Assembly (NCBI RefSeq): GCF_001194135.2
Contig: NC_068983.1
Coordinates: 83,956,362-83,998,767, forward strand
Length of the DNA: 42,406 nucleotides
Direction: 5' to 3'
Source: Octopus bimaculoides
Taxonomy: Eukaryota
The position numbers and the translations under genes were made by a program. Each line of letters begins with the position of its first letter. Position 1 is the stretch's first letter. Positions 1 through 41,977 of the stretch are shown piece by piece. The notes beneath the pieces are model-generated. The model was given only the letters and a program-made list of their open reading frames with translations, was not told the DNA's origin and made no database searches.

Positions 1-465
1 GTCTATTCTGTATTTTATGTAGTTTGTTCTTAGTGCTTGCTCTTGGGCAGCACAGATTAGAGCCTCTGTTTCCGGTTTTAAATCACTTTTAGTCATCCAC
101 AGCCATCTTTTTTCTCTGTCTGTCTTATCTCCAGCATCACTATGGAATTGTCCATGCATTCCTTTCTTTACCCACCTATTTTCAGTTTCATTCGTGTTCA
201 ATTGCTTGTACAGTGCTTTATCTTTGCAATCTTTCATCCTACACAAGCCTGACCTTCTTACTTCTAATAATAGCGGTTCTGTGGCATTTTTTACATACCA
301 TGGTATGTTGTTTTCTTCTGCTCTAATGCTGTGTTCGCATCCAAAAAGTCCTCTTACCCCTCTTTTTCTTGCTACATACAATCTGTCTGTGTCACTTTTT
401 TGGTGGAGTGTCCCATATCTAGTTAGCAATTTCCTTGTCTTTCTGTCTAAGCTGTTTAGTTCGTT
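1..465 (-). mobile_element. R4/Dong-like RLE non-LTR retrotransposon (family A), 5'-truncated copy with an uninterrupted reading frame running off the window edge
   Basis: The minus strand 465->1 translates for 155 codons without a stop: NELNSLDRKTRKLLTRYGTLHQKSDTDRLYVARKRGVRGLFGCEHS...KGMHGQFHSD...WLWMTKSDLKPETEALICAAQEQALRTNYIKYRID. This matches the post-RT region of R4-clade ORFs (LDRKTRKLLT..G.LHP.SD.DRLY..R..GGRG; HGQF; LK.ETE..I.AAQEQAL.TN). It is missing from the ORF track because it has no in-window stop. Confidence 0.92.
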
Positions 466-508
466 TATTATTATTATTATAATTATTGTTGTTGTTGTTG
501 TTGTTATT
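466..508. repeat. (TAA)n/(CAA)n microsatellite (minus-strand reading) joining two family-A RLE copies
   Basis: The plus strand reads tattattattattataattattgttgttgttgttgttgttatt, between the 3' UTR of one copy and the truncation point of the next. Confidence 0.9.
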
Positions 509-2300
509 GCTATGTTTGGCCTTTGCTTTAATTGTACAAGTCACAACCAAGTCTCAAGTCTCACCCAGAGATGTCAAGAGAGAACAAGCTCTCTTACATC
601 TAAAGATGCAAATAGGTGAAATGTCATGCAATTGAAAGAACTGATATTTGTGAGCTATAAAAAAATTCTGGATAATGATAGTCTATGTAGAGCTCTGACT
701 AATAAATTAATAGTCGTACGTTATTCTTATGGCACCTTTTATTATAGTGATTGTTCTTGCTTTCAGTTTTCACATTTCTGTTATCTCTATTTCCAGATCT
801 TTGTATTCTGGTCATTTCTCCATTTCTACGAGATTCACATTATCATACGTTCAAATTGATATTTCGATTAGGAGGTGTTTCTTTTCCTAGTTTTCCTTTA
901 CAACATCACCTTGTTGATTAGTTCTGATATCTATTGTCGGTGTGCATTAACATATCTCCGAGTATATTTACTTGCCTCTTCTATGGAACTTTTCCTCGTA
1001 TATACCGATATCACATGGTTTCTTTCTTTCTTTCTTTTTTGTCATTTCACTGACATAACTTCCAGTGGGTGTAAGTCTCAATTTTTTGTACCTGGTTAAG
1101 ACTAGCCAATTATAGAAAATGTAGCTAATCGTTTCTTCTCTATCTCTACATGTTTTGCAATTGTTTTATTCCGCTTCTTTATAAGCTTTGGGTGATTTCC
1201 AATAAGGACTTTGATCCCGCATTAAGAATATTCGATCTCAACTTTCAGTCTTGCGCTCATCAGCCAGTGTTATGAGTTTTCTTTGTCTGCTGTCTTCGGC
1301 TTTTTTATGTGCTGGTCATGCAGAGGCTTTTGTTTCTGTCATTTTATCGTTACATTCATTTTTAACTTCAACTTCATCCATTTTGTAATTTCTTTTCAGT
1401 TATTCTCCTTTGTCTTGGTAACTATCTGTCGTTTCAGCCACTGTCTCGTATTTTGTTAGCTTTCTTTAAAACAGAAAACGCATTATTCTTCGGAGAGGAG
1501 AGGTGTTCGTGTTTCATGGCTACTTGTATTAGTTTTCCATTATTGTTTATTAGATATAAGACTACAGTATGTAGATGTAAGACTACAGTATGTGGTCTTA
1601 CAATTTTCCAGTTGAATAAGGCCTCTATATCACTATGCTCGTGCTAAATTGAATCCATTCCTATCTGACTCTATGTAATGTATTCTAAACGCAATCGTTA
1701 TAGTTTCTTGTTTTTATTTTCTCTCTTACCTTCTTAGTTCGTTTAGCGTCAAACTGGGGGTATTATAACTATAATTCATTAATCAGACAACTAGAATTTG
1801 ACGCCTATTTCCTTTAACTCTATTTTAAGCATTACTCTAATATGCCCTCCTGATCTTTTCTATTTTTCCATTTGTGTGTTTTGTACACTGTTCATTGATC
1901 CCAAAGTATTTCTGTATTTGTTTGGTTTAACTCTCTTATCTCAATTTCTTTATCTAGCATATTAGTGTTCTTAATTTTCTTCTTTTCGAGTTTCTTGGGT
2001 GCATTTTTATCATCTTAATTCCATATCAATTTCTCTAGTAAATCCTTGTAGTGCCGGTTGTGACGCTTCGAGTTGTTTATTGCCTTCGGTGCACAGTTCG
2101 AGTTTGTGCATATACAAAAGATGATTGGTTGTCTTACCATAGTATTAGTATCCGAGTTTATCCTAATTAAATGCCAGTTAAATGCCAGAGCTATAATTTT
2201 AAAAAATTAGTCAAGCGAGAAAGATCTCTTGCAATTTTCTAATTCTAATAGAGACGAGTTTAGTATTTTTCCGTATCTGCAAGATTGTTTACCGTTTACA
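509..2300 (-). mobile_element. R4/Dong-like RLE non-LTR retrotransposon (family A), decayed 3' part (RT end, zinc knuckle, RLE, 3' UTR)
   Basis: Minus-strand motifs appear in the expected order despite stops and frameshifts: a QGD-like motif (~2250), NHLLYMHKL (the YMDDL equivalent, ~2120), KYFGINE, RGLIQLE, KPLHDQH, CKTCRDREETISYI...HWKLC (CCHC knuckle remnant), and HLLIEISI*TYDNVNLVEMEK*PEYKDLEIEITEM*KLKARTITIIKGAI (RLE). A short UTR then runs into the AAC/AAT tail. Confidence 0.88.
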
Positions 2301-2870: not shown

Positions 2871-4125
2871 GCGATGTAACCTACGTAAAACAAACATCGA
2901 AGAAGCTGCAAGAGCTGCTCAAAAGTTCAAAAGTATTGCAAGCTCTTCTGAATCCATTGCAATGCTGGAAACTGCTCTGTATCATCAGAGAATGGGTATC
3001 ACAAGCGTGATCACAAGCGTGATCTATATGATCTATAGGACCAATACTGATACGGGGCTAAACAACAACATCACTGTCCAAATTACCATAACCAATAACA
3101 CTTGTCAACCATGTCACCATAACTACCTCTAGTATTTGCATTCTAGATGGTGTTACATTAATGACGGCTACCGTCAGTCATAAACAACAATCCGATCTAT
3201 ACAAAGGAAGCAACTAAACGCAGTGATCAGAAAGAAGAGACAAGGGGAGGAAACGGGTTGCATTGACTGCTTGTCCATTTAAGAAGCTATCTTCTTCACT
3301 CTCTCACAGGACTAGCCTAGCTTTACCATGCACTCCCTTTTGATGCCCTTTCAAAAGATCCATTCCTATTTCTCACAATATACAAATGCCATATCAGAAC
3401 CTTGCTGCACTTCTGGATTTTTCATGTTACACTCTCCCCCTTTTTTCCACACATCACTTTGGTCCTTTTCTTTTCTCTCCCTCTCTCTCCCTCTCCCTCT
3501 CTCTCTCTCTCCCTCTCTCTCTCTCTCTCTNNNNNNNNNNNNNNNNNNNNNNNNNNNNNNNNNNNNNNNNNNNNNNNNNNNNNNNNNNNNNNNNNNNNNN
3601 NNNNNNNNNNNNNNNNNNNNNNNNNNNNNNGTGTGTGTGTGTGTGCGTGTGTGTGCGTGTGTGTGTGTGTGTGTGTTTGTTTGTGTCTTTGCTATTGAAT
3701 ATTCTATTCTTTAGGGTGTTTTCAGGGAAAAGAAGATGAAGAGAAAGAGTGAAAGAGAGAGAGTGTGAGAGAGAAAGCGACAGCAATGGAGAGGAATGCT
3801 TGAAAGCTTTTATTCATGTTAAATTTTGTTAATTTTATTTTTCTATTAATTACTTTGTTATATTTTATCATTTTCTTGATACGCGATGTATTGTATATAC
3901 ATACAGCATCACTGTATGTGTGTGTGTGACGTGCGTGTGTTTGTATGTACGTGAAAACCTGTATTTACGTGTGTGTGTGCATATATATCTGTATGTATGT
4001 GTGTATATATATATATATACATACACACACGCACTCACGTACATACACGTGTGCGTGTGTGTCTGAATGTCTTTGTATGGATATATACAAATATATTTAA
4101 ATATTATGTTCATATGTATGTGTGC

Positions 4126-5521: not shown

Positions 5522-5656
5522 NNNNNNNNNNNNNNNNNNNNNNNNNNNNNNNNNNNNNNNNNNNNNNNNNNNNNNNNNNNNNNNNNNNNNNNNNNNNNNN
5601 NNNNNNNNNNNNNNNNNNNNNNNNNNNNNNNNNNNNNNNNNNNNNNNNNNNNNNNN

Positions 5657-7712: not shown

Positions 7713-7780
7713 TAGCTAGGTAGCTATCAATCTAGCTAGCTACACAGACAGACAGACAGACAGACAGGTAGGTAGGTAGG

Positions 7781-7835
<55 letters not shown>

Positions 7836-9078: not shown

Positions 9079-9362
9079 TGTGTATATTTGTATTTATACA
9101 CACACACACACANNNNNNNNNNNNNNNNNNNNNNNNNNNNNNNNNNNNNNNNNNNNNNNNNNNNNNNNNNNNNNNNNNNNNNNNNNNNNNNNNNNNNNNN
9201 NNNNNNNNNNNNNNNNNNNNNNNNNNNNNNNNNNNNNNNNNNNNNNNNNNNNNNNNNNNNNNNNNNNNNNNNNNNNNNNNNNNNNNNNNNNNNNNNNNNN
9301 NNNNNNNNNNNNNNNNNNNNNNNNNNNNNNNNNNNNNNNNNNNNNNNNNNNNNNNNNNNNTC

Positions 9363-9496: not shown

Positions 9497-9582
9497 CAGA
9501 GTCCGCCAAAAAATGTATGCACACTTCGGGAAAGGAAAAATTTGCATAAATATTTAACTTGTATAAGTATACATATATATAT

Positions 9583-9665
<83 letters not shown>

Positions 9666-9783
9666 GATAGATAGATAGATACCGCTTTCGATGTTTTATA
9701 AAACTGCAATAACACTGAATAAAAATATTTATACAGGTTTTCCCTTTCCTTAAGTGTGTATACATTTTAGTGGGTGGACTCTG
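9497..9783. mobile_element. Tc1/mariner-type MITE (287 bp) with ~60-bp TIRs and TA target duplication
   Basis: The left end is TA|CAGAGTCCGCCAAAAAATGTATGCACACTTCGGGAAAGGAAAA and the right end (reverse complement) is TA|CAGAGTCCACCCACTAAAATGTATACACACTTAAGGAAAGGGAAAA. TA lies at 9495-96 and 9784-85. The interior is mostly (GATA)n. Confidence 0.88.
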
Positions 9784-9964
9784 TATATCGTCTCTCGGAG
9801 CGCGGATAATTTCAATGAATTAAAAATTTAAATCGTATTGCACTTAATATAATATTATTTATTTTTGTTGTCCAAATTTTTTCTGCTGACTCCTCTGATT
9901 TATTATTCTCTACTCATTTCTTCTTTATATACGTATGCATTTATCTGTGCATGTATTGCGTGAT

Positions 9965-11286
9965 TGTATGTCTGCATATATGTATGCATGTATGTATATA
10001 TGTATGTCATTATTCAATTTATTTCAAGATTTCTTGCCAATAGAGAAAAAAACCGGTTTCTAACCTAGATTCAAGGTTCCTACACTGGAACTTCAACATC
10101 AACAACAGGGTATATTTGTTTGTATGTATGTATGTATGTATGTATGTATGTATGTATGTATGCATGCATGTATGTATATGCAGATTTGTATGTTCTATGT
10201 ATGTATTGTCATGCATATAGTTACATATCTAGACATGCTCATATATATTTAAATGATAAACTTCTGGGAAGTTTTACATTGATGGATTGGATCTGTAGTC
10301 TTCGAATCAGCTTTCTTCTTTCTGGTTTTGAGAAGCCTAATTTCTCAAGATTGGTATTTAGGCAGTGTGTTACATATCCCAGGGCCCCAATAAATACAGG
10401 TATAAACCTGAACTTGTAGTTTGGATAGAGTAACTGCAGANNNNNNNNNNNNNNNNNNNNNNNNNNNNNNNNNNNNNNNNNNNNNNNNNNNNNNNNNNNN
10501 NNNNNNNNNNNNNNNNNNNNNNNNNNNNNNNNNNNNNNNNNNNNNNNNNNNNNNNNNNNNNNNNNNNNNNNNNNNNNNNNNNNNNNNNNNNNNNNNNNNN
10601 NNNNNNNNNNNNNNNNNNNNNNNNNNNNNNNNNNNNNNNNNNNNNNNNNNNNNNNNNCAGCAGTGTTCTCTTTTTCACTGATCTTCAAGCTTTATGTTAA
10701 CATCCGCTGGGCAGCTAATTTCCACAACTGTGCTCAGTTTCTCTTCTCTATCCCAAATCATTATATCAGGTCTGTTGTGCTTACATTTTATTGAGGTTTT
10801 CCCTGGTACATTCCACCAGTATTCCTTTTCATTATGAGTGGCTATGGCTTTTACCATATCGTGTTTTTTTTTAATTCTTTGTCCTCGGGATTATCCTTCC
10901 GACGGATTTCATTATAGAGTGTCCTAACTACAACGTCATGTCTCATCGGTAGATAATACCATGATGACATTTTCGGACAACTGCTTATGATGTGGGTGAT
11001 ATCTTTCAGTACGGATTCCACAAAGTCTGCATCGGTTGTCACATTTTACGGCTTTTCCTGCATCTCTATCCCTTTTGTGCATCAAGTACTTGGTTGATAT
11101 TTCCTGTTCCTGGATTGCAATCGCAAACTCTTCAAAGTAGGAGGTAGTAGTCCGGCTATTGGTCCATGATAAACTGCTTTGATGATCGATGTTACTATCA
11201 TCACGGAGCTTTCTACTAACATATCCATGCATAGTCTTGTGTTCATATAGGCTCATCTTTTCATCTGATGATATCTTGCGGTAGAG
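9965..11286 (-). mobile_element. R4-like RLE non-LTR retrotransposon (family B), 5'-truncated, with frameshifts and an internal gap
   Basis: The minus strand gives HKTMHGYV...FAIAIQEQEISTKYL...CDNRCRLCG...DITHIISSCPKMSSWYYLPMRHDVV (CCHC knuckle), WWNVP...KHNRPDIMIWDREEKLSTVVEISCPAD (PD-D/ExK-type RLE) and FRFIPVFIGALGYV...LIRRLQIQS. The 3' UTR contains a GTTAGAAACC motif and (CATA)n lies at both ends. Confidence 0.92.
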
Positions 11287-11631
11287 TATGTATGTATGTA
11301 TGTATGTATGTAGAATTTTCAAATGTATAAGAATTAGTAGAATTACCTAACAAACACGAGATTTGTAGTTCAATTCCTCTCAAGGAAGTTCCTACATGCA
11401 GGTTTTCAAATTTTGATCCGTCCTAATATAAACAGAATTATATTGTGCATATAAGAACCGAATTTTTCATTGGGTAGATGCGTGTGCTTGTGTGAGTTTG
11501 TGTGTGCCTATGTATGAGTTAGTACTGTTTCGTTCCTATGCTATTAATAACTCGTTTAAGCAGAACTATAATCATAAGCATAACAGCCATAGCTATGCTA
11601 TCTTTTATGCAGTTAACATATCTACGATTGT

Positions 11632-14815: not shown

Positions 14816-14931
14816 TTGTGTATACATATATATATATATATATATATATATGCATACACATATACATCTACNNNNNNNNNNNNNNNNNNNNNNNNNNNNN
14901 NNNNNNNNNNNNNNNNNNNNNNNNNNNNNNN

Positions 14932-18613: not shown

Positions 18614-18963
18614 NNNNNNNNNNNNNNNNNNNNNNNNNNNNNNNNNNNNNNNNNNNNNNNNNNNNNNNNNNNNNNNNNNNNNNNNNNNNNNNNNNNNNNN
18701 NNNNNNNNNNNNNNNNNNNNNNNNNNNNNNNNNNNNNNNNNNNNNNNNNNNNNNNNNNNNNNNNNNNNNNNNNNNNNNNNNNNNNNNNNNNNNNNNNNNN
18801 NNNNNNNNNNNNNNNNNNNNNNNNNNNNNNNNNNNNNNNNNNNNNNNNNNNNNNNNNNNNNNNNNNNNNNNNNNNNNNNNNNNNNNNNNNNNNNNNNNNN
18901 NNNNNNNNNNNNNNNNNNNNNNNNNNNNNNNNNNNNNNNNNNNNNNNNNNNNNNNNNNNNNNN

Positions 18964-19008
<45 letters not shown>

Positions 19009-19145
19009 TATATATAAAACATACACACAGAGGCATATATGCATACATATACGCACAAGTACATATGTGTGTCTGTGTCTTTCTGTCTGTATGTGCTACA
19101 TATTATATGTATGTTATAGATAGATAGATAGATAGATAGATAGAC

Positions 19146-19234
<89 letters not shown>

Positions 19235-20740: not shown

Positions 20741-21110
20741 CTTTTTTACCCTTTACACACACACACACACACACACATACATACATACACACAGAGTGAG
20801 GGTGGGATAGAAAGAACATGAAGATACATATTAGTGTAAACAAATCCACAAAAATGTCTTGAATGCAATAATATTTATTTCAACTTCAAACTTCACATAT
20901 CGCAGCTCAGAGTTTCATGCTGTTGTGCTGCTACCTACCGCCCGAGAATCAAAAGCATGAAACTCAGAGTTCCAAGTTTATCAAGTTTCAGTTTTAATAT
21001 ATATACCTTCATATATACATAGACACATGTTCATATGTATATATGTACACATATACATAGATAGATAGACAGACAGACAGACAGAAGATAGATAGACAGA
21101 CAGAAGACAG

Positions 21111-21168
<58 letters not shown>

Positions 21169-25797: not shown

Positions 25798-28282
25798 TAT
25801 GGCTGGGTGAGTTGTTCAGAGCGCTATCACTTGTGTCAATCTGCATCGAATTACATTTTTAAAAGAATGAGTTTTGTGCTTAAAGCAAAATTAAAACTTT
25901 TCTATCGTTAACAGCGGATCCTGGTAAAACAAAATAATTTCTAACATTGGCGTTATTCCAGAAGCAATCGATGTGATACTCACGGTTGGAATGTCTTTTA
26001 ATTATACGTCTACTTGATCTGGTCTGACCTGGAGCTACACGACAAAAGCAACAACTACACAACTTTGTCTTTTGCACTAACTCCCACATCATCCTTTATT
26101 TATCTTTTATTTCTATGTGCGTGTGTGTGTTTTCATCTATTTTTACGTGTCAAATGGTAAATGGGTAATGGTTCTGTTTTGTTTTGTTTTTTCATTGCAA
26201 TAGCTTTTCGACCGGTTGGTTAACCTAATCCATCACCTCGTTTAACACCACAACTTAACACATTGGTAATCTATTTTTAGTGAAGTCCACTTCGTTGTAA
26301 CTACTTAGACCTGGACTCCAGCCAGCAGATAACTCGATACCTTCGTACAATACAATTTACTTCAGCAACTCTTGAGTTTTAGATTTTTCCTTCTTTCCGT
26401 ACGCCATTCATGGAAGTTCTGCTAAAATTCATAGAGGCCGCTCCTCTAAGCAATAAAAAGAATTTAACTATGACTTAAAAGTATAACTTGCTTGTCAGTC
26501 AAACAGACTGAGGAGAGCAGTGGAATATCTTTAAAAATGAATGAAAACAAAAAGAAAACGTGATGAAAAACAAAATTTCTAAGAATCATTTAACCCCTTG
26601 TTTTAAAATTACATAAGTCAATAGAAATCAAATCTGATTACTAATTATGATTTGCATTTTTGTTTATTGTGTTTATTTCTTAAATTTTATATATTCTTTT
26701 TCTCTTAATTTATTTTTCTCCATAATTAACTAAAATTTGCCAGAAGAATTAGAAGAAATACACAAAAAAGAATCATTCACTTTTGAGTTATATTAATCTT
26801 TGAATTACTTTAGTCTTTTAACTTTGTAAGGAGAACGACATTAACAACTGACAATATCATATCTTAATCTCTTTAAAATGTTTGTTCGATGGCATGTCTT
26901 CAGCTCAGCGCCAATAACTGCTACACCATTAAGGCTGTATAATATAAGCTGCAGCTCTTTACTTTCACAGTGATCTCATATACATACATACATACATACA
27001 TACATACATACACACACGCACACACACACACACACGTACATACATACATGCATACATACACACATACATACATACATGCATACATGCACACATACATACA
27101 TACATACATACATACATACATACATACATACACGCGTATGTCTGTACGTATGTATGAATGTGTTTGTATATCTGTGTATATACATGTATATATATATATA
27201 TATTATATATATAGGCATGTGTGTGTGTGTAGTGTATTTTTGTTTGTATGTGTGCGTACGCGTGTGCGTGAGAGAGAGAGAAGTATAAATGATAAAAAGA
27301 AGAAAATGTTGAAGAAGTTACCTAAGACGAAGAAGAAGAGGAGGAAGAGGAAGACGACGACGACGACGAAGGAGAAGACTTAATGAAATATTAATTCCAT
27401 TATATTCAAAAATGATGATATTCTCACCAATTTTATTAAGTCTCAACTGTTTAGTTACACAAATTTAATTTACTGATTAATTTTTTCAGTTTTTTTTTCC
27501 TTGATTAGTTTTTTTATTTGCTGTTCCTTCCTTTTTTTTCTATATTTTTTCTATTTCCATAATTGTTTTATTTTTTTTATCGTATTGAGTTTTTCTTTCC
27601 TTTTCTTTTCAATACTATTTTCTTCATTTTGTACAAATTTTAAATCATTGTTGTGCGTTTTTTATTAAAATTTTCTTTCTGGATTTGTGTAATTTTCTTG
27701 TTTATTGTTTCAGTTATTTTTCTCACAAATCATTTGTTTTGTTGTTGTTGTTGTTGTTAATGATTTTTGTTATTTTTTTAATTTGTTAGTTATTTATCAG
27801 TTTGAGGGCAATTGTTCATTAAATCTTGGCTTAAGTGATTACTTTATTAAAGAACCATATAGACGGTAAACTGGAACGAAAGTGAAGAGAGAAAGTGCTG
27901 TAAGAGCACTGCTAATGGTAATTTCGACGACAACGATGTGGATGATGATGATGATGATGATGATGAACAAAGAAGTTGTTTTGCATGGTAATCCCTTTGG
28001 TAGTACTTATTCTGTACATATACTCTCACATATTTATTAAACCCGCTTACTCACATAGCAAACGTAGATGAATCATCCACCAATTTAGACGATGAGTATT
28101 TCGGTCGGTCGTTAAACTGAATTATCACCTTATTGAATTATAGTTTAAGTAACAGAGTATATCACACACTCTGGTACTCATTACATAATATCCTGGTAGA
28201 CTCGGCGTGGCAATGTGCATGAGAAGGATACACGAGCATATGCATGAGTGTCTGTATATACATATATATTATATATATATAT

Positions 28283-28478: not shown

Positions 28479-28760
28479 ATATATTATATATATATATATA
28501 CATATATACATATTATTAATTTGGGTCTTTTTTTTTTTTGTTAATTTTTGCTTTCTTACAAGAAAGGTAAATATTTCGAAGATANNNNNNNNNNNNNNNN
28601 NNNNNNNNNNNNNNNNNNNNNNNNNNNNNNNNNNNNNNNNNNNNNNNNNNNNNNNNNNNNNNNNNNNNNNNNNNNNNNNNNNNNNNNNNNNNNNNNNNNN
28701 NNNNNNNNNNNNNNNNNNNNNNNNNNNNNNNNNNNNNNNNNNNNNNNNNNNNNNNNNNNN

Positions 28761-29000
28761 AATGATAATCTGGATAAACTGAGATTTTCAGAAAAAGAAA
28801 TCGACCAGCTAATTCGCACATTACAAATATAATCTGTAAGCGGAAGACTAAAAATATGCGAGACTTTTCTCAGATTCAAAACGTAAATCTGTTTTCGTTA
28901 TCAACATTCTAGCACTGGATCTTTGTATCTTTGTTAGAAACCAACTCCTTCCTTGCAGAAGAAGTCCAAATAATTAAAAATAGAAGACAGCACATACGCA

Positions 29001-29032
<32 letters not shown>

Positions 29033-29065
29033 TACATACATACATACATACATACATACATACAT
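28761..29065 (+). mobile_element. 3' end of an R4-like family-B retrotransposon
   Basis: NDNLDKLRFSEKEIDQLIRTLQI*SVSGRLKICETFLRFKT* parallels NTNLEKLGFSKPERRKLIRRLQIQSIN...CKTSQKFII* of 9965-11286. The shared UTR motif GTTAGAAACC is at 28933-28942, and the element ends in (CA)n(CATA)n. Confidence 0.8.
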
Positions 29066-29797
29066 AAATATATGTGTTTGTTTGTGTGGAAGGGTCTCCG
29101 TCAGTTTCGCGATGAAAATGCATTAGTTTGATGAATTGAATTATCTGCACATTGAGTTTGTGTGTAAATGGCTTAGTATTCCACATAACATGGTCCCTTA
29201 GCGTAATTCTCAGGCATAATAAATATAATACAGTACGGGATACGGTTATATCTTTGAATTACAGATACACTTCATCTGAAGGGTTTCATTATAGTTTTCA
29301 TCTGCCGAATTTCTCTCGCAAAGGTGGGTCATCCAGAAACATCCTCCGAATTTCAAGCTTTGTGCCTATAGTAAAAAGATTTATTATTATTATTTACGAA
29401 TTATCTAATAATAATTCTGCTTGTCACTGCGTTACTTAGCCCGTCGGTAACGCTTTGATGTGATTGATTAAAGAAAAAGAGGAAGAGAGAAGCGTCCATG
29501 ACGTGAGGTAGGGGGAATGTAATTGTAACGCCTTCATGTGATTAGTTGAAGAGAAAGAGAGGAGAAAGAAAAAGGAAAGAGAAAAGATGATAAGGCGGAG
29601 AGAGAGACAGAAAGAGTGAGAACGGAAAAGAAGGAAAAAGAAAAAGAGGGAGAAAGAAGCGTCCATGACTTAAGGTAGGGGGAACATAATATTTATTACG
29701 TGGTTAAAAAAGTTAGTTGAGGGTACTGATATAGAAAGAGCTAGAGATATAATTTTAGCATAGGGGTGATTTTCTGATGATGAGGTTAAAGAAAGGT

Positions 29798-38486: not shown

Positions 38487-39636
38487 TTAAAATTTAGGGT
38501 TTAGCAAGTACTGCTTCCCCACACACCGAAAATTAGAAATAGCAGCCAAAACTACTAAAATACGACTCCCAAAAGCAGTAATACTCGCAAACTACAAAGG
38601 CAAAAAAGGAAAAAATAATGAATCTACCCGACCTTGATTAATTGTGGACGCATTTCTAGATCTATGAAATGTAAAAAAATTAATTGTTAATTTTTACCCT
38701 GTGTGTGTGTGTGTGTATATATATATATACATATACATATAGGGAGTAATAAACAGTCGACAACTGTGGAGGGGTTAGACTTCTTTTGATATTTTGCCCT
38801 GTATTTATGTTTCGTGTTTACGTATATAGATATACAAGTATGGAAGCATTCGGTGAAGTCGATTTCACGTGAAAAGCGATTACACACACATCTCTGTTTT
38901 ATATATAGTATATATATATATATATATATATATNNNNNNNNNNNNNNNNNNNNNNNNNNNNNNNNNNNNNNNNNNNNNNNNNNNNNNNNNNNNNNNNNNN
39001 NNNNNNNNNNNNNNNNNNNNNNNNNNNNNNNNNNNNNNNNNNNNNNNNNNNNNNNNNNNNNNNNNNNNNNNNNNNNNNNNNNNNNNNNNNNNNNNNNNNN
39101 NNNNNNNNNNNNNNNNNNNNNNNNNNNNNNNNNNNNNNNNNNNNNNNNNNNNNNNNNNNNNNNNNNNNNNNNNNNNNNNNNNNNNNNNNNNNNNNNNNNN
39201 NNNNNNNNNNNNNNNNNNNNNNNNNNNNNNNNNNNNNNNNNNNNNNNNNNNNNNNNNNNNNNNNNNNNNNNNNNNNNNNNNNNNNNNNNNNNNNNNNNNN
39301 NNNNNNNNNNNNNNNNNNNNNNNNNNNNNNNNNNNNNNNNNNNNNNNNNNNNNNNNNNNNNNNNNNNNNNNNNNNNNNNNNNNNNNNNNNNNNNNNNNNN
39401 NNNNNNNNNNNNNNNNNNNNNNNNNNNNNNNNNNNNNNNNNNNNNNNNNNNNNNNNNNNNNNNNNNNNNNNNNNNNNNNNNNNNNNNNNNNNNNNNNNNN
39501 NNNNNNNNNNNNNNNNNNNNNNNNNNNNNNNNNNNNNNNNNNNNNNNNNNNNNNNNNNNNNNNNNNNNNNNNNNNNNNNNNNNNNNNNNNNNNNNNNNNN
39601 NNNNNNNNNNNNNNNNNNNNNNNNNNNNNNNNNNNN

Positions 39637-39797: not shown

Positions 39798-40400
39798 TCA
39801 TGTATATTTCCTATTTAGTATTGGAGAAGTTTCATTTATGAGGACGTACTTCTGTATTTGTCTGAGTGTTGGGGCCTTTGGGTGCTTGGATAAGATGCGA
39901 ATGTCAAGTTGACCCAGGTAGCCTCCGTGTTGGTCCTTGGCATGTTGGTAGAGTATGGAGGACTGTTTTTTGTCGTCATATTGTGTCAAATGTTCATTTA
40001 GTCGTTCCGCAATGCTCCTGGATGTCTCCCCTATGTATGTCATGTTCATGTCTTTACAAGCACCTTCTATGCATCTTATGCTGTAAACTATATTTCTAGT
40101 TCTACAGTTAAAGCCAGGGCTAATCCTACGTGCCATGCAGTCATCATTGGTGTATATGGTATTCTCAAAGGGATACGTCCTACATAGTTGTGATATGATG
40201 GAGTTCCCTGGCTTTTCAACAATCTTAATGTTGAGTTTGGACTCCTTCAGAGCTTTTCTAAACCAACGCGCTTGTTCTCCATGGGCTATGGCCTCTACAA
40301 ACATCACTCCTTGATATTTGTCGGTTTTATACCACGTGTTCGCCCTGCTTGCTTTGTCACAAGTTCTTTGTATCCTATTTCAGTCTCTGTTTCTTATAAG
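39798..40400 (-). mobile_element. Penelope-like element, 3' part with GIY-YIG endonuclease
   Basis: ORF 39798-40307 reads NCRTRNIVYSIRC...YIGETSRSIAERLNEH...LYQHAKDQH...LRQIQKYVLINETSPILNRK. The same frame continues upstream as RNRD*NRIQR...TWYKTDKYQGVMFVEA. The conserved E before 'LIN' appears lost. Confidence 0.93.
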
Positions 40401-40536: not shown

Positions 40537-41977
40537 TNNNNNNNNNNNNNNNNNNNNNNNNNNNNNNNNNNNNNNNNNNNNNNNNNNNNNNNNNNNNNNN
40601 NNNNNNNNNNNNNNNNNNNNNNNNNNNNNNNNNNNNNNNNNNNNNNNNNNNNNNNNNNNNNNNNNNNNNNNNNNNNNNNNNNNNNNNNNNNNNNNNNNNN
40701 NNNNNNNNNNNNNNNNNNNNNNNNNNNNNNNNNNNNNNNNNNNNNNNNNNNNNNNNNNNNNNNNNNNNNNNNNNNNNNNNNNNNNNNNNNNNNNNNNNNN
40801 NNNNNNNNNNNNNNNNNNNNNNNNNNNNNNNNNNNNNNNNNNNNNNNNNNNNNNNNNNNNNNNNNNNNNNNNNNNNNNNNNNNNNNNNNNNNNNNNNNNN
40901 NNNNNNNNNNNNNNNNNNNNNNNNNNNNNNNNNNNNNNNNNNNNNNNNNNNNNNNNNNNNNNNNNNNNNNNNNNNNNNNNNNNNNNNNNNNNNNNNNNNN
41001 NNNNNNNNNNNNNNNNNNNNNNNNNNNNNNNNNNNNNNNNNNNNNNNNNNNNNNNNNNNNNNNNNNNNNNNNNNNNNNNNNNNNNNNNNNNNNNNNNNNN
41101 NNNNNNNNNNNNNNNNNNNNNNNNNNNNNNNNNNNNNNNNNNNNNNNNNNNNNNNNNNNNNNNNNNNNNNNNNNNNNNNNNNNNNNNNNNNNNNNNNNNN
41201 NNNNNNNNNNNNNNNNNNNNNNNNNNNNNNNNNNNNNNNNNNNNNNNNNNNNNNNNNNNNNNNNNNNNNNNNNNNNNNNNNNNNNNNNNNNNNNNNNNNN
41301 NNNNNNNNNNNNNNNNNNNNNNNNNNNNNNNNNNNNNNNNNNNNNNNNNNNNNNNNNNNNNNGACCGTTATTAAGACAAAAGAGCTATTAGAATGACCGC
41401 TAAGTGAGGGGAGGGAGTAAAAATGTCCATAGTATTCGCATAAGCGCACCAGTCCATACATACACATGCGCGCCCGCATACCCACGTACATGCGCCTATA
41501 TGTATATACTCATTCACCCTCGCTTGAAACGCACACATACTCACCCGCACATTCACCAAAAAAATATATATATCGCATATACACTCACACACACACGCGC
41601 GCAACACGCTCGCACCCACACACACGCGCGCAAAAAAGGTTCATACACACGTCAATATACGCACATGCCCAAGAAAAACTGGGCTAAAGGCAAAATACAG
41701 TAAAAAGTGTAAAAAAGTGTGAAAAAGCCATAAGGGCAAAACACGTCTATGTGCACACATTCTCGCATGCACGCACACACATCTATATATACACGTACCC
41801 GCGCACACGCACACATCCACAAGTGCGCACAAAAGGTTCCATGTACACGTCTATAGACGCACAGGGAAAAAGCAGGGTGGAAGAGAGAATACAGAAAAAA
41901 TATGTGTAAAAAATATACAAAACAATATCTATAAATATGTAAAAAAAATATATTAAAAAATATATAAGAAATTTAAG

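What the first reader, a model, noticed from the sequence alone, without database searches (positions are those of the whole stretch)
9965..11310. A second RLE retrotransposon family bounded by (CATA)n at both ends: candidate tetranucleotide-microsatellite-specific element
Seen: the 5' truncation point (11286) abuts a pure (TATG)n tract (11287-11310). The 3' UTR contains (CATA)n and ends in a degenerate CATA tail. An independent copy at 28761-29065 also ends in (CA)n(CATA)n. The protein is clearly divergent from family A. Inference: two coexisting RLE lineages partition microsatellite targets (TAA versus CATA) and may both use and seed these arrays. I know TAA and TA targeting in this clade but cannot say whether CATA targeting is described.
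Basis: partly seen in the sequence, partly recalled or inferred. Interest (0 to 1): 0.7.

Follow-up and report, generated by a model that had tools for sequence, protein, structure and literature searches.

The report
CATA-microsatellite-targeting RLE retrotransposon, dead copy
This is a broken, front-truncated copy of an R2-like jumping gene whose lineage sits inside (CATA)n microsatellites at both ends, so it looks like a tetranucleotide-specific cousin of the (TAA)n-specific Dong elements.

Summary
On the minus strand, 9933-11312 is a 5'-truncated, frameshifted copy of a non-LTR retrotransposon that encodes a restriction-like endonuclease (RLE). Its 5' break abuts (CATA)6.8. Its 3' UTR ends in a degenerate (CATA)n tail. 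A second, diverged copy (28761-29070, plus strand) ends in (CA)n(CATA)n.

The assembly gap hides only about 6 codons, and its two sides are collinear on homologous proteins.

The host is an octopus: the nearest named protein is from O. bimaculoides.

The decisive evidence comes from relatives (44-57% amino-acid identity) in other assemblies:
- Two intact full-length copies (single ORFs of 1134 and 1161 aa) and one truncated copy have (CATA)n on both sides.
- A sister group shows the same anatomy with (CTTA)n at 10 of 11 5' junctions.
- The window's "family A" lineage shows it with (TAA)n.

Fourteen 5' junctions at different truncation points abut the tail repeat in the tail's orientation, and a tail cannot explain that. 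Chance in this window is about 0.25-0.65%.

A predicted structure matches R2 proteins (Foldseek E = 4e-11). A covarying 3' UTR hairpin is conserved.

I found no published (CATA)n or (CTTA)n target for RLE elements. Repbase and Dfam could not be checked. Only one octopus 5' junction was seen.

The parts
11286..11312 (-). 5' flanking microsatellite: (GTAT)6.8 on the plus strand, which is (CATA)n on the element strand. It directly abuts the 5' truncation point.
   Evidence: TRF gives 100% matches; sequence read. The DNA beyond it (11313-11500) is not a detectable 3' UTR of another copy (51 of 300 shuffles reach the score).
10658..11285 (-). Coding remnant, part 1. It corresponds to about aa 852-1049 of the intact 1134-aa relative. 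It holds the linker, the CCHC zinc knuckle (CDNRCRLCG at 11017-11043, ITHIISSCP at 10974-11000) and the RLE core (RPDIMIWD at 10750-10773, VVEISCPADVN at 10696-10728). It is read in three frames, with frameshifts near 11015 and in the T9 run at 10866-10874, and an in-frame stop after ...KLEDQ.
   Evidence: homologs aligned
10441..10657 (.). Assembly gap of 217 N. By homology it hides only about 6 codons of the same element.
10239..10440 (-). Coding remnant, part 2. This is the C-terminal region with the FIGALGYVT motif (10368-10394), ending at the TGA stop at 10239-10241.
10207..10238 (-). Start of the 3' UTR. Its ATGTCTAGA motif is shared with the start of the L002 3' UTR.
10117..10206 (-). 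(TACA)n tract inside the 3' UTR, specific to this copy. It is either an expansion within the UTR or the old tail onto which a 109-nt 3'-end-only copy was added. This is unresolved.
   Evidence: TRF gives 23 copies at 78% matches. The tandem arrangement in L002 is the precedent for the second reading.
10008..10116 (-). Conserved 3' UTR of 109 nt. It equals the whole UTR of copy 2 and contains the covarying hairpin at 10050-10079.
9933..10007 (-). Degenerate (CATA)n 3' tail, or the downstream half of the target array.
   Evidence: TRF rows 9933-10007 and 9965-10007
28761..28886 (+). Copy 2: C-terminal coding remnant, with a premature TAA at 28830-28832 and the true stop at 28884-28886. Everything upstream is lost in gap 28585-28760.
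28887..28991 (+). Copy 2: 3' UTR, with the hairpin at 28918-28947.
28992..29070 (+). Copy 2: (CA)n(CATA)n tail.

Best explanation
Copy 1 (9933-11312, minus strand) is a dead, 5'-truncated insertion of a single-ORF non-LTR retrotransposon. The ORF order is a roughly 400-aa N-terminal region, reverse transcriptase, a CCHC knuckle and a C-terminal PD-(D/E)xK restriction-like endonuclease. The lineage integrates by target-primed reverse transcription inside (CATA)n microsatellites.

Shown:
- The protein is R2-like.
- The element RNA ends in a conserved 3' UTR with a covarying hairpin, followed by (CATA)n.
- Copies truncated at different points, as well as intact full-length copies, have the same repeat in the same orientation on both sides.
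- Sister lineages do the same with (CTTA)n and (TAA)n.
- Very short 3'-end copies and head-to-tail tandems accumulate in these arrays.

Inferred:
- The RLE nicks the (TATG)n strand.
- The (CAUA)n at the RNA 3' end pairs with the nicked repeat and sets the register for priming.
- The hairpin is the site where the reverse transcriptase binds.
- Early stops of cDNA synthesis give the 5' truncations.
- Each insertion splits an array and adds repeat units, so the element both uses and renews its target.
For: Identity of the protein:
- Homologs carry CCHC, KHN(R/K)PD...E(I/V)SCP.D.N...K and IGALGYV motifs.
- The AF2 model of P0003 has pLDDT 91.
- Its top Foldseek PDB hits are R2 proteins 9nl3, 9dou, 9nl2 and 8gh6, with E from 4e-11 to 8.5e-7 and TM-score (query-normalised) 0.65-0.72.
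- The intact L015 ORF matches R2 chains by sequence at E = 3.5e-27.
- Pfam finds RVT_1 in both intact ORFs and a sub-threshold zf-RVT match in L017 (21.5 bits against a 27.5 cut-off), and nothing in the N-terminal region.

(CATA)n on both sides:
- Window copy 1.
- L007: (ATAC)65.8, then a truncated copy, then (CATA)56.5 with unique DNA beyond.
- L015: (CATA)26, an intact 1134-aa ORF, then (ACAT)28.
- L017: (CATA)19, an intact 1161-aa ORF, then (ATAC)8(ACAT)9.

(CATA)n seen at the 3' end only: window copy 2, L005, L018, and L010 where CATA turns into GACA.

(CTTA)n sister group:
- L003 is a clean case, with unique flank, (TTAC)20.8, a truncated copy, (ACTT)5.8 and unique flank.
- The others are L002 (two copies), L004 A and B, L008 (two copies), L011, L013 and L014.

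(TAA)n lineage: window 1-465 (minus strand) and L009.

Other points:
- Full-length 5' ends share a motif (GCAG.CG...GGACGTG) directly after the repeat.
- The 3' UTR hairpin is 89.9% paired against 67% in shuffles (0 of 500) and 27-45% when slid, and 9 of 10 pairs show compensatory changes.
- The chance of abutment in this window is 0.25-0.65%.
- An element-free (CATA)n/(CA)n array at 26980-27132 shows that such targets exist without the element.
Against: Only one 5' junction comes from octopus DNA. The other octopus fragment (L001) is not next to a microsatellite, but it has also lost its 3' end.

One short copy (L004 C) abuts the inverse repeat (TAAG)51.

The hosts of the relatives are unidentified eukaryotes in metagenome assemblies. 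Several contigs end in the repeat, so the DNA beyond it is unseen.

No empty site was compared, and there is no biochemistry. Some 5' repeats are clearly the tails of upstream copies (L002, L004, L008, L011), which fits targeting but also fits template jumping.
Confidence: 0.8

Rival explanations
1. Specificity lies in the RNA and not in the nuclease. The RLE nicks loosely, or existing breaks are used. Insertions then succeed wherever the (CAUA)n end of the RNA can pair, so the 'target' simply follows the tail.
For: Lineages with the same protein architecture and about 45-55% identity use three different repeats, each identical to its own tail. Tails can drift within a copy, as in L010 (CATA to GACA) and copy 2 ((CA)n then (CATA)n). 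5' arrays are also mixed, as in L004 and L008.
Against: The tail type is stable within subclades of the protein tree. That fits co-evolving protein specificity equally well. No data here separate the two ideas.
Confidence: 0.2
2. The repeat is only a tail made by the element, as in RTE, CR1 and L2 LINEs, and insertion sites are not specific. The 5' repeats are tails of older upstream copies, or are produced by the reverse transcriptase jumping onto another RNA's tail.
For: Head-to-tail tandems and copies consisting only of a 3' end are common (L002, L004, L008, L011, L007).
Against: L003 and L007 have a pure repeat with unique, non-element DNA upstream, and window copy 1 has non-element DNA beyond its 5' repeat. 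In L015, L017, L013 and L014 the conserved full-length 5' end directly abuts the repeat, although those contigs begin in the repeat so the DNA further upstream is unseen. With random insertion, tandems would be rare. Fourteen of fifteen informative 5' junctions lying in the right repeat and orientation is not expected.
Confidence: 0.07
3. It is chance adjacency, or microsatellite growth after insertion, in a genome that is very rich in microsatellites.
For: The window is crowded with simple repeats (193 TRF rows). A (TACA)n tract also lies inside the copy 1 UTR.
Against: Chance is 0.25-0.65% per junction, before requiring the right orientation. The same pattern recurs in genomes with far fewer repeats. 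Different truncation points cannot each seed the same repeat.
Confidence: 0.03

Closest known systems
Dong (Bombyx mori; also DongAg and DongBg), R4/Dong clade
   Same: It is an RLE-type single-ORF non-LTR retrotransposon. It inserts in a microsatellite that matches its own 3' repeat, and it shows 5' truncations (PMC3812793, PMC3774820). The window's family A and its relative L009 behave like Dong, with (TAA)n. Family B shares the CCHC, RLE and IGALG C-terminal layout with family A.
   Different: Family B uses tetranucleotides, (CATA)n or (CTTA)n in sister lineages, and not (TAA)n. It is only 24-31% identical to family A proteins over the C-terminal region. Rfam did not find the 5' HDV-like ribozyme that Dong and R4 have. 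That negative result is weak.
Waldo (WaldoAg1, WaldoAg2, WaldoFs1), R1 clade
   Same: Its target is (ACAY)n, which includes the same ACAT/CATA repeat (PMC3812793).
   Different: Waldo has an N-terminal APE endonuclease and belongs to the R1 clade of insects. The element here has a C-terminal RLE of R2 type. The shared target is therefore convergent.
Togen (fish, near NeSL) and the microsatellite-specific HERO families of the leech
   Same: These are RLE-type elements specific for microsatellites: (TG)n for Togen and unspecified repeats for HERO (PMC4640811).
   Different: The repeats differ. Whether family B falls in HERO or in R4/Dong could not be tested without reference RT sequences.
R2
   Same: The RT, linker, zinc knuckle and RLE fold are the same, and R2 is the closest solved structure. 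R2 also uses a structured 3' UTR as the RT-binding signal. That is established for R2 and inferred here.
   Different: R2 has N-terminal zinc-finger and Myb domains and one fixed 28S rDNA site. Pfam finds no such N-terminal domains here, and the target is a microsatellite.

Membership tests
RLE-type (R2-superfamily) non-LTR retrotransposon | Reverse transcriptase domain in a single ORF | tested here: met
   Pfam RVT_1 at E = 4e-26 and 2e-25 in the intact ORFs of relatives L015 and L017. phmmer against PDB R2 chains gives E = 3.5e-27. The window copy itself is truncated downstream of the RT; it covers about aa 852-1134.
RLE-type (R2-superfamily) non-LTR retrotransposon | CCHC zinc knuckle followed by a C-terminal PD-(D/E)xK endonuclease fold | tested here: met
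   The motifs are present in the window at 10974-11043 and 10696-10773. The AF2 model of homolog P0003 (49% identical) has pLDDT 91 and matches R2 proteins by Foldseek at E = 4e-11, TM-score (query-normalised) 0.72. A sequence profile against PDB found nothing.
RLE-type (R2-superfamily) non-LTR retrotransposon | Hallmarks of target-primed reverse transcription: variable 5' truncation, a fixed 3' end, no LTRs | tested here: met
   At least 10 different 5' truncation points share the same 3' UTR followed by the repeat.
R4/Dong clade | RT-domain phylogeny groups it with Dong and R4 | not testable with these tools
   No Repbase or Dfam reference sequences were available, and the supplements of PMC4640811 hold no RT alignment. 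Published octopus annotations list Dong-R4 as the abundant RLE class and Hero and R2 as minor ones (PMC13282606, PMC10294476).
R4/Dong clade | No N-terminal zinc-finger or Myb DNA-binding domain (from my own knowledge of the clade) | tested here: inconclusive
   Pfam finds no domain in the first roughly 425 residues of the L015 and L017 ORFs. The absence of a Pfam hit is weak evidence.
R4/Dong clade | HDV-like self-cleaving ribozyme at the 5' end (PMC3774820) | tested here: inconclusive
   Rfam at permissive thresholds finds no ribozyme at the 5' ends of L004 A, L015 or L017. These ribozymes are often missed by covariance models. A conserved 5' motif does exist.
Dong proper | Insertion in (TAA)n | tested here: not met
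   Family B is flanked by (CATA)n, or by (CTTA)n in the sister group. Only the window's family A and L009 show (TAA)n.
Waldo (R1 clade, ACAY-specific) | N-terminal APE endonuclease | tested here: not met
   The endonuclease is a C-terminal RLE, and Pfam finds no APE domain in the intact ORFs.
Microsatellite-specific retrotransposon (functional class) | The same repeat in the same orientation at 5' junctions, where a tail cannot explain it | tested here: met
   CATA group: 4 of 4 informative junctions (window copy 1, L007, L015, L017). CTTA group: 10 of 11. The octopus fragment L001 is uninformative because it is truncated at both ends..
Microsatellite-specific retrotransposon (functional class) | Empty alleles show an uninterrupted target array; the nuclease cleaves the repeat | not testable with these tools
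   No second octopus individual and no biochemistry were available.

The most novel reading that the evidence does not exclude
Family B and its sisters form a clade of R2-like elements whose address is written in the RNA. The short repeat at the 3' end of the template ((CAUA)n, (CUUA)n or (UAA)n) selects the genomic microsatellite by base pairing. A change of tail then retargets the element with little or no change in the protein, which would make it a naturally programmable RLE retrotransposon.
Probability: 0.2. Interest if true: 0.8.

Novelty: new variant of a known kind. Interest (0 to 1): 0.5.

Why it matters
Microsatellite-specific RLE retrotransposons are known for (TAA)n (Dong) and (TG)n (Togen), and for some HERO families. 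(ACAY)n is known only for the unrelated APE-type Waldo.

Here, related lineages with one protein architecture occupy three different microsatellites: (CATA)n, (CTTA)n and (TAA)n. Two of the three co-occur in one 42-kb octopus window. Intact full-length ORFs of the CATA lineage are also in hand (L015, L017).

This gives a natural series for asking how R2-like elements change their address, by protein or by RNA tail. That question matters now that R2 proteins are being developed for site-specific gene insertion.

It also offers a concrete source for part of the dense tetranucleotide arrays of cephalopod genomes. Each insertion renews the array, and copies made only of a 3' end pile up inside it.

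Tried and rejected
1. I asked whether the DNA beyond the 5' (CATA)6.8 (11313-11500, minus strand) is the 3' UTR of an upstream copy, which would make the repeat just that copy's tail. The local alignment score is no better than shuffled sequence (51 of 300), and the hairpin motif is absent. Rejected.

2. Pfam on the four window peptides gave nothing meaningful.

3. phmmer with P0005 and an HMM profile of 18 homologs against PDB sequences gave no significant R2 hit. Structure prediction with Foldseek, and the full-length ORF, were needed.

4. The octopus locus L001 holds a fragment 82% identical to copy 1, but it is truncated at both ends and gives no junction information.

5. Rfam found no HDV-like ribozyme at full-length 5' ends. 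It found no Rfam family in the window at gathering scores. The mir-297 hits in L015 and L017 are only the (TATG)n repeat.

6. Clade placement by RT phylogeny was not possible, because no Dong, R4 or HERO reference sequences could be obtained.

A 9-sequence alignment worked.

8. NJ trees agree that the tail type is constant within subclades. They disagree on the deep branching, so I make no claim about how many CATA/CTTA switches occurred.

9. I could not settle whether the internal (TACA)n at 10117-10206 is an expansion within the UTR or the junction between two insertions.

10. An apparent shared 'ATAT' start of the 109-nt pieces in the window and in L002 proved to be an alignment artefact, because the distances to the hairpin differ.

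Full report
**What is in the window.** The window is AT-rich (36% GC) and full of simple repeats. It has 11 assembly gaps. The nearest named protein to the finding is an Octopus bimaculoides 'uncharacterized protein' (P0002, 72% identical, on chromosome record CM046628.1). The host is therefore an octopus.

**Anatomy of copy 1.** The element lies on the minus strand. Read 5' to 3', its parts are:
- (CATA)6.8 at 11312-11286, pure by TRF.
- A coding remnant from 11285 to 10658, read in three frames.
- The gap at 10657-10441.
- More coding sequence from 10440, ending at a TGA stop at 10241-10239.
- 32 nt of 3' UTR.
- A (TACA)n tract at 10206-10117.
- A 109-nt conserved 3' UTR at 10116-10008.
- A degenerate (CATA)n tail at 10007-9933.

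The peptides carry a CCHC knuckle (C..C...H....C, split by a frameshift) and an RLE core (RPD...E.S...K).

**The gap, tested first.** On homologs P0007 and P0001, the residues just before and just after the gap are collinear, and only about 6 residues lie between them. Both sides therefore belong to one element in the right order. The true gap is probably about 18 nt if the copy is undamaged there. The 217 N tell us nothing about the reading frame.

**Copy 2 and family A.** Copy 2 (28761-29070, plus strand) keeps the last 41 codons, a 105-nt UTR and a (CA)n(CATA)n tail. Its 5' part is lost in a gap. The two copies are old and independent: blastn finds no DNA match between them. Their UTRs still align significantly (0 of 300 shuffles). 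It is only 23-28% identical to family B proteins, and its 5' truncation abuts (CAA)8(TAA)7.

**Is the abutment more than chance?** Six perfect ACAT-class tracts of at least 4 units cover 0.48% of the read bases. Three of them belong to these two copies, in the element's orientation. A random point lies within 3 bp of a tract boundary with probability 0.25%, and within 10 bp with 0.65%. The DNA beyond the 5' repeat is not a recognisable UTR of another copy. The tract at 26980-27132 is a (CATA)n/(CA)n array with no element next to it, so such arrays exist as free targets.

**What the protein is.** Pfam sees nothing in the window pieces. A protein search found 30 relatives. Aligned, they share C(R/K)LC...ED..HIIS.CP, KHN(R/K)PD, E(I/V)SCP.D.N...K and IGALGYV.

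An AlphaFold model of P0003, which is 49% identical to the window copy, has pLDDT 91. Its best PDB matches are R2 retrotransposon proteins from zebra finch, turtle and silkmoth. The E-values run from 4e-11 to 8.5e-7 and the query-normalised TM-scores from 0.65 to 0.72, over about 250 columns.

Two contigs from a JGI metagenome carry intact single ORFs of 1134 and 1161 aa. Pfam finds RVT_1 in both and a sub-threshold zf-RVT match in L017, and no domain in the first roughly 425 residues. The L015 ORF matches R2 chains by sequence at E = 3.5e-27. The window copy corresponds to about residues 852-1134 of that ORF.

**The junction test, run on relatives.**

In the CATA group:
- L007 is a long-read contig. 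It has (ATAC)65.8, then a copy truncated inside the knuckle region, a 555-nt UTR, (CATA)56.5 and then unique DNA.
- L015 has (CATA)26, the conserved 5' end GCGCGCAGTCGC..., the intact ORF, the UTR and (ACAT)28.
- L017 has the same layout, with (CATA)19 and (ATAC)8(ACAT)9.
- L005 and L018 end in (CATA)n. L010 ends in CATA that turns into (GACA)n.

In a sister group the repeat is (CTTA)n:
- L003 is the cleanest case. It reads unique flank, (TTAC)20.8, truncated copy, UTR, (ACTT)5.8 and unique flank.
- L002 has a copy truncated at a different point, followed by a 109-nt 3'-end-only copy, each followed by (CTTA)n.
- L004 and L008 each have a full-length copy after the repeat and a truncated copy after the next repeat.
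- L011, L013 and L014 have the conserved full-length 5' end directly after (CTTA)n.

For family A, L009 lies among (TAA)n tracts spaced about 270 bp apart.

In total, 14 5' junctions at different positions in the element abut the tail repeat in the tail's orientation. One short copy (L004 C) abuts the inverse repeat. The octopus fragment L001 has lost both ends and is uninformative. Tails cannot produce this pattern. Insertion into the repeat can.

**3' UTR.** The last roughly 110 nt are recognisably conserved between the octopus copies and relatives at 45-50% protein identity. RNAalifold predicts one hairpin, at window 10050-10079 and 28918-28947. Of its cells, 89.9% are paired, against 67% in shuffles (0 of 500) and 27-45% when the partner is slid. 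Nine of its 10 pairs show changes on both sides. Only seven sequences went into this. By analogy with R2, this is the likely RT-binding signal. That is inference.

**Mechanism.**
- Shown: R2-type protein architecture, a fixed 3' end made of UTR plus repeat, variable 5' ends, the same repeat on both sides, and accumulation of tandems and of copies made only of a 3' end. In L007, 13-nt end snippets are interspersed in the 5' array.
- Inferred: the RLE nicks the repeat, the repeat at the RNA 3' end pairs with the nicked strand, reverse transcription starts there, and it often aborts.
- Open: whether the protein or the RNA tail sets the address. The tail type is constant within subclades of the protein tree, but the deep branches are unresolved.

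**Comparison with what is known.** Published microsatellite targets are:
- (TAA)n for Dong.
- (ACAY)n for Waldo and (AC)n for Mino.
- (TC)n for Kibi and (TTC)n for Koshi. All of these come from PMC3812793.
- (TG)n for Togen and some leech HERO families (PMC4640811).

Waldo shares the repeat but has an APE nuclease, so the resemblance is convergent. Dong-R4 elements are known to be abundant in octopuses (PMC13282606, PMC9115989, PMC8967140, PMC10294476). None of those papers addresses target sites.

I found no description of a (CATA)n or (CTTA)n target for an RLE element in seven completed literature searches. Repbase and Dfam could not be consulted. Placement in R4/Dong as opposed to HERO is untested. 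No HDV-like ribozyme, which Dong and R4 have, was detected by Rfam. That negative result is weak.

**Verdict.** The window copy itself is a dead fragment. The interest lies in the lineage, which is a tetranucleotide-specific variant of the Dong-like way of life. It has sister lineages on other repeats, and intact copies are available for experiments.

Noticed in passing
window 1-509: Family A: a 5'-truncated fragment of a Dong-like RLE element on the minus strand (1-465) runs off the window start. Its 5' end abuts (CAA)8(TAA)7 at 465-509. Relatives (P0021 group) sit among (TAA)n tracts in L009.
   Followed up: partly
window 39798-40307 (minus strand): A 169-aa ORF with a GIY-YIG nuclease domain (Pfam E = 5e-5), probably the C-terminus of a Penelope-like element. 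It lies next to gap 38934-39636.
   Followed up: partly
window 26980-27132: A long (ATAC)n/(CA)n array with no recognisable element UTR beside it. It is a possible unoccupied target of the CATA family.
   Followed up: partly
window 7746-7834, 9575-9681, 19116-19232, 21053-21168: Seven perfect AGAT-class tracts make (ATAG)n as common as (ACAT)n in this window. They may be the tails or targets of another repeat family.
   Followed up: no
L007 1992-2283: The 5' (CATA)n array is interrupted several times by a 13-nt snippet (aatgaatgtaaag) that resembles the extreme 3' end of the element. It looks like repeated abortive insertions.
   Followed up: partly
L004 8836-9039: (TAAG)51, the inverse complement of the usual (CTTA)n, lies between the 3' UTR of copy A and a roughly 100-nt 3'-end copy. 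It is the only junction in the wrong orientation, and I cannot explain it.
   Followed up: no
L015 116-160, L017 100-145, L014 101-130, L013 57-95: Full-length copies of the CATA and CTTA lineages share a 5'-terminal motif (GCAG.CG...GGACGTG) directly after the repeat. It could be part of a ribozyme or a promoter. Rfam finds nothing there.
   Followed up: partly
P0008; L010 15-48: One homolog is deposited as a protein of a Pseudomonadota MAG, so a eukaryotic retrotransposon contig has probably been binned into a bacterial genome. Contig L010 starts with what looks like a sequencing-adapter sequence.
   Followed up: no
window gaps 3531-3630, 5522-5656, 9113-9360, 14872-14931, 18614-18963, 38934-39636, 40538-41362: Most assembly gaps are flanked by dinucleotide or other simple repeats (TG, AT, TC). 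The gaps therefore probably mark collapsed microsatellites and not missing unique sequence.
   Followed up: no
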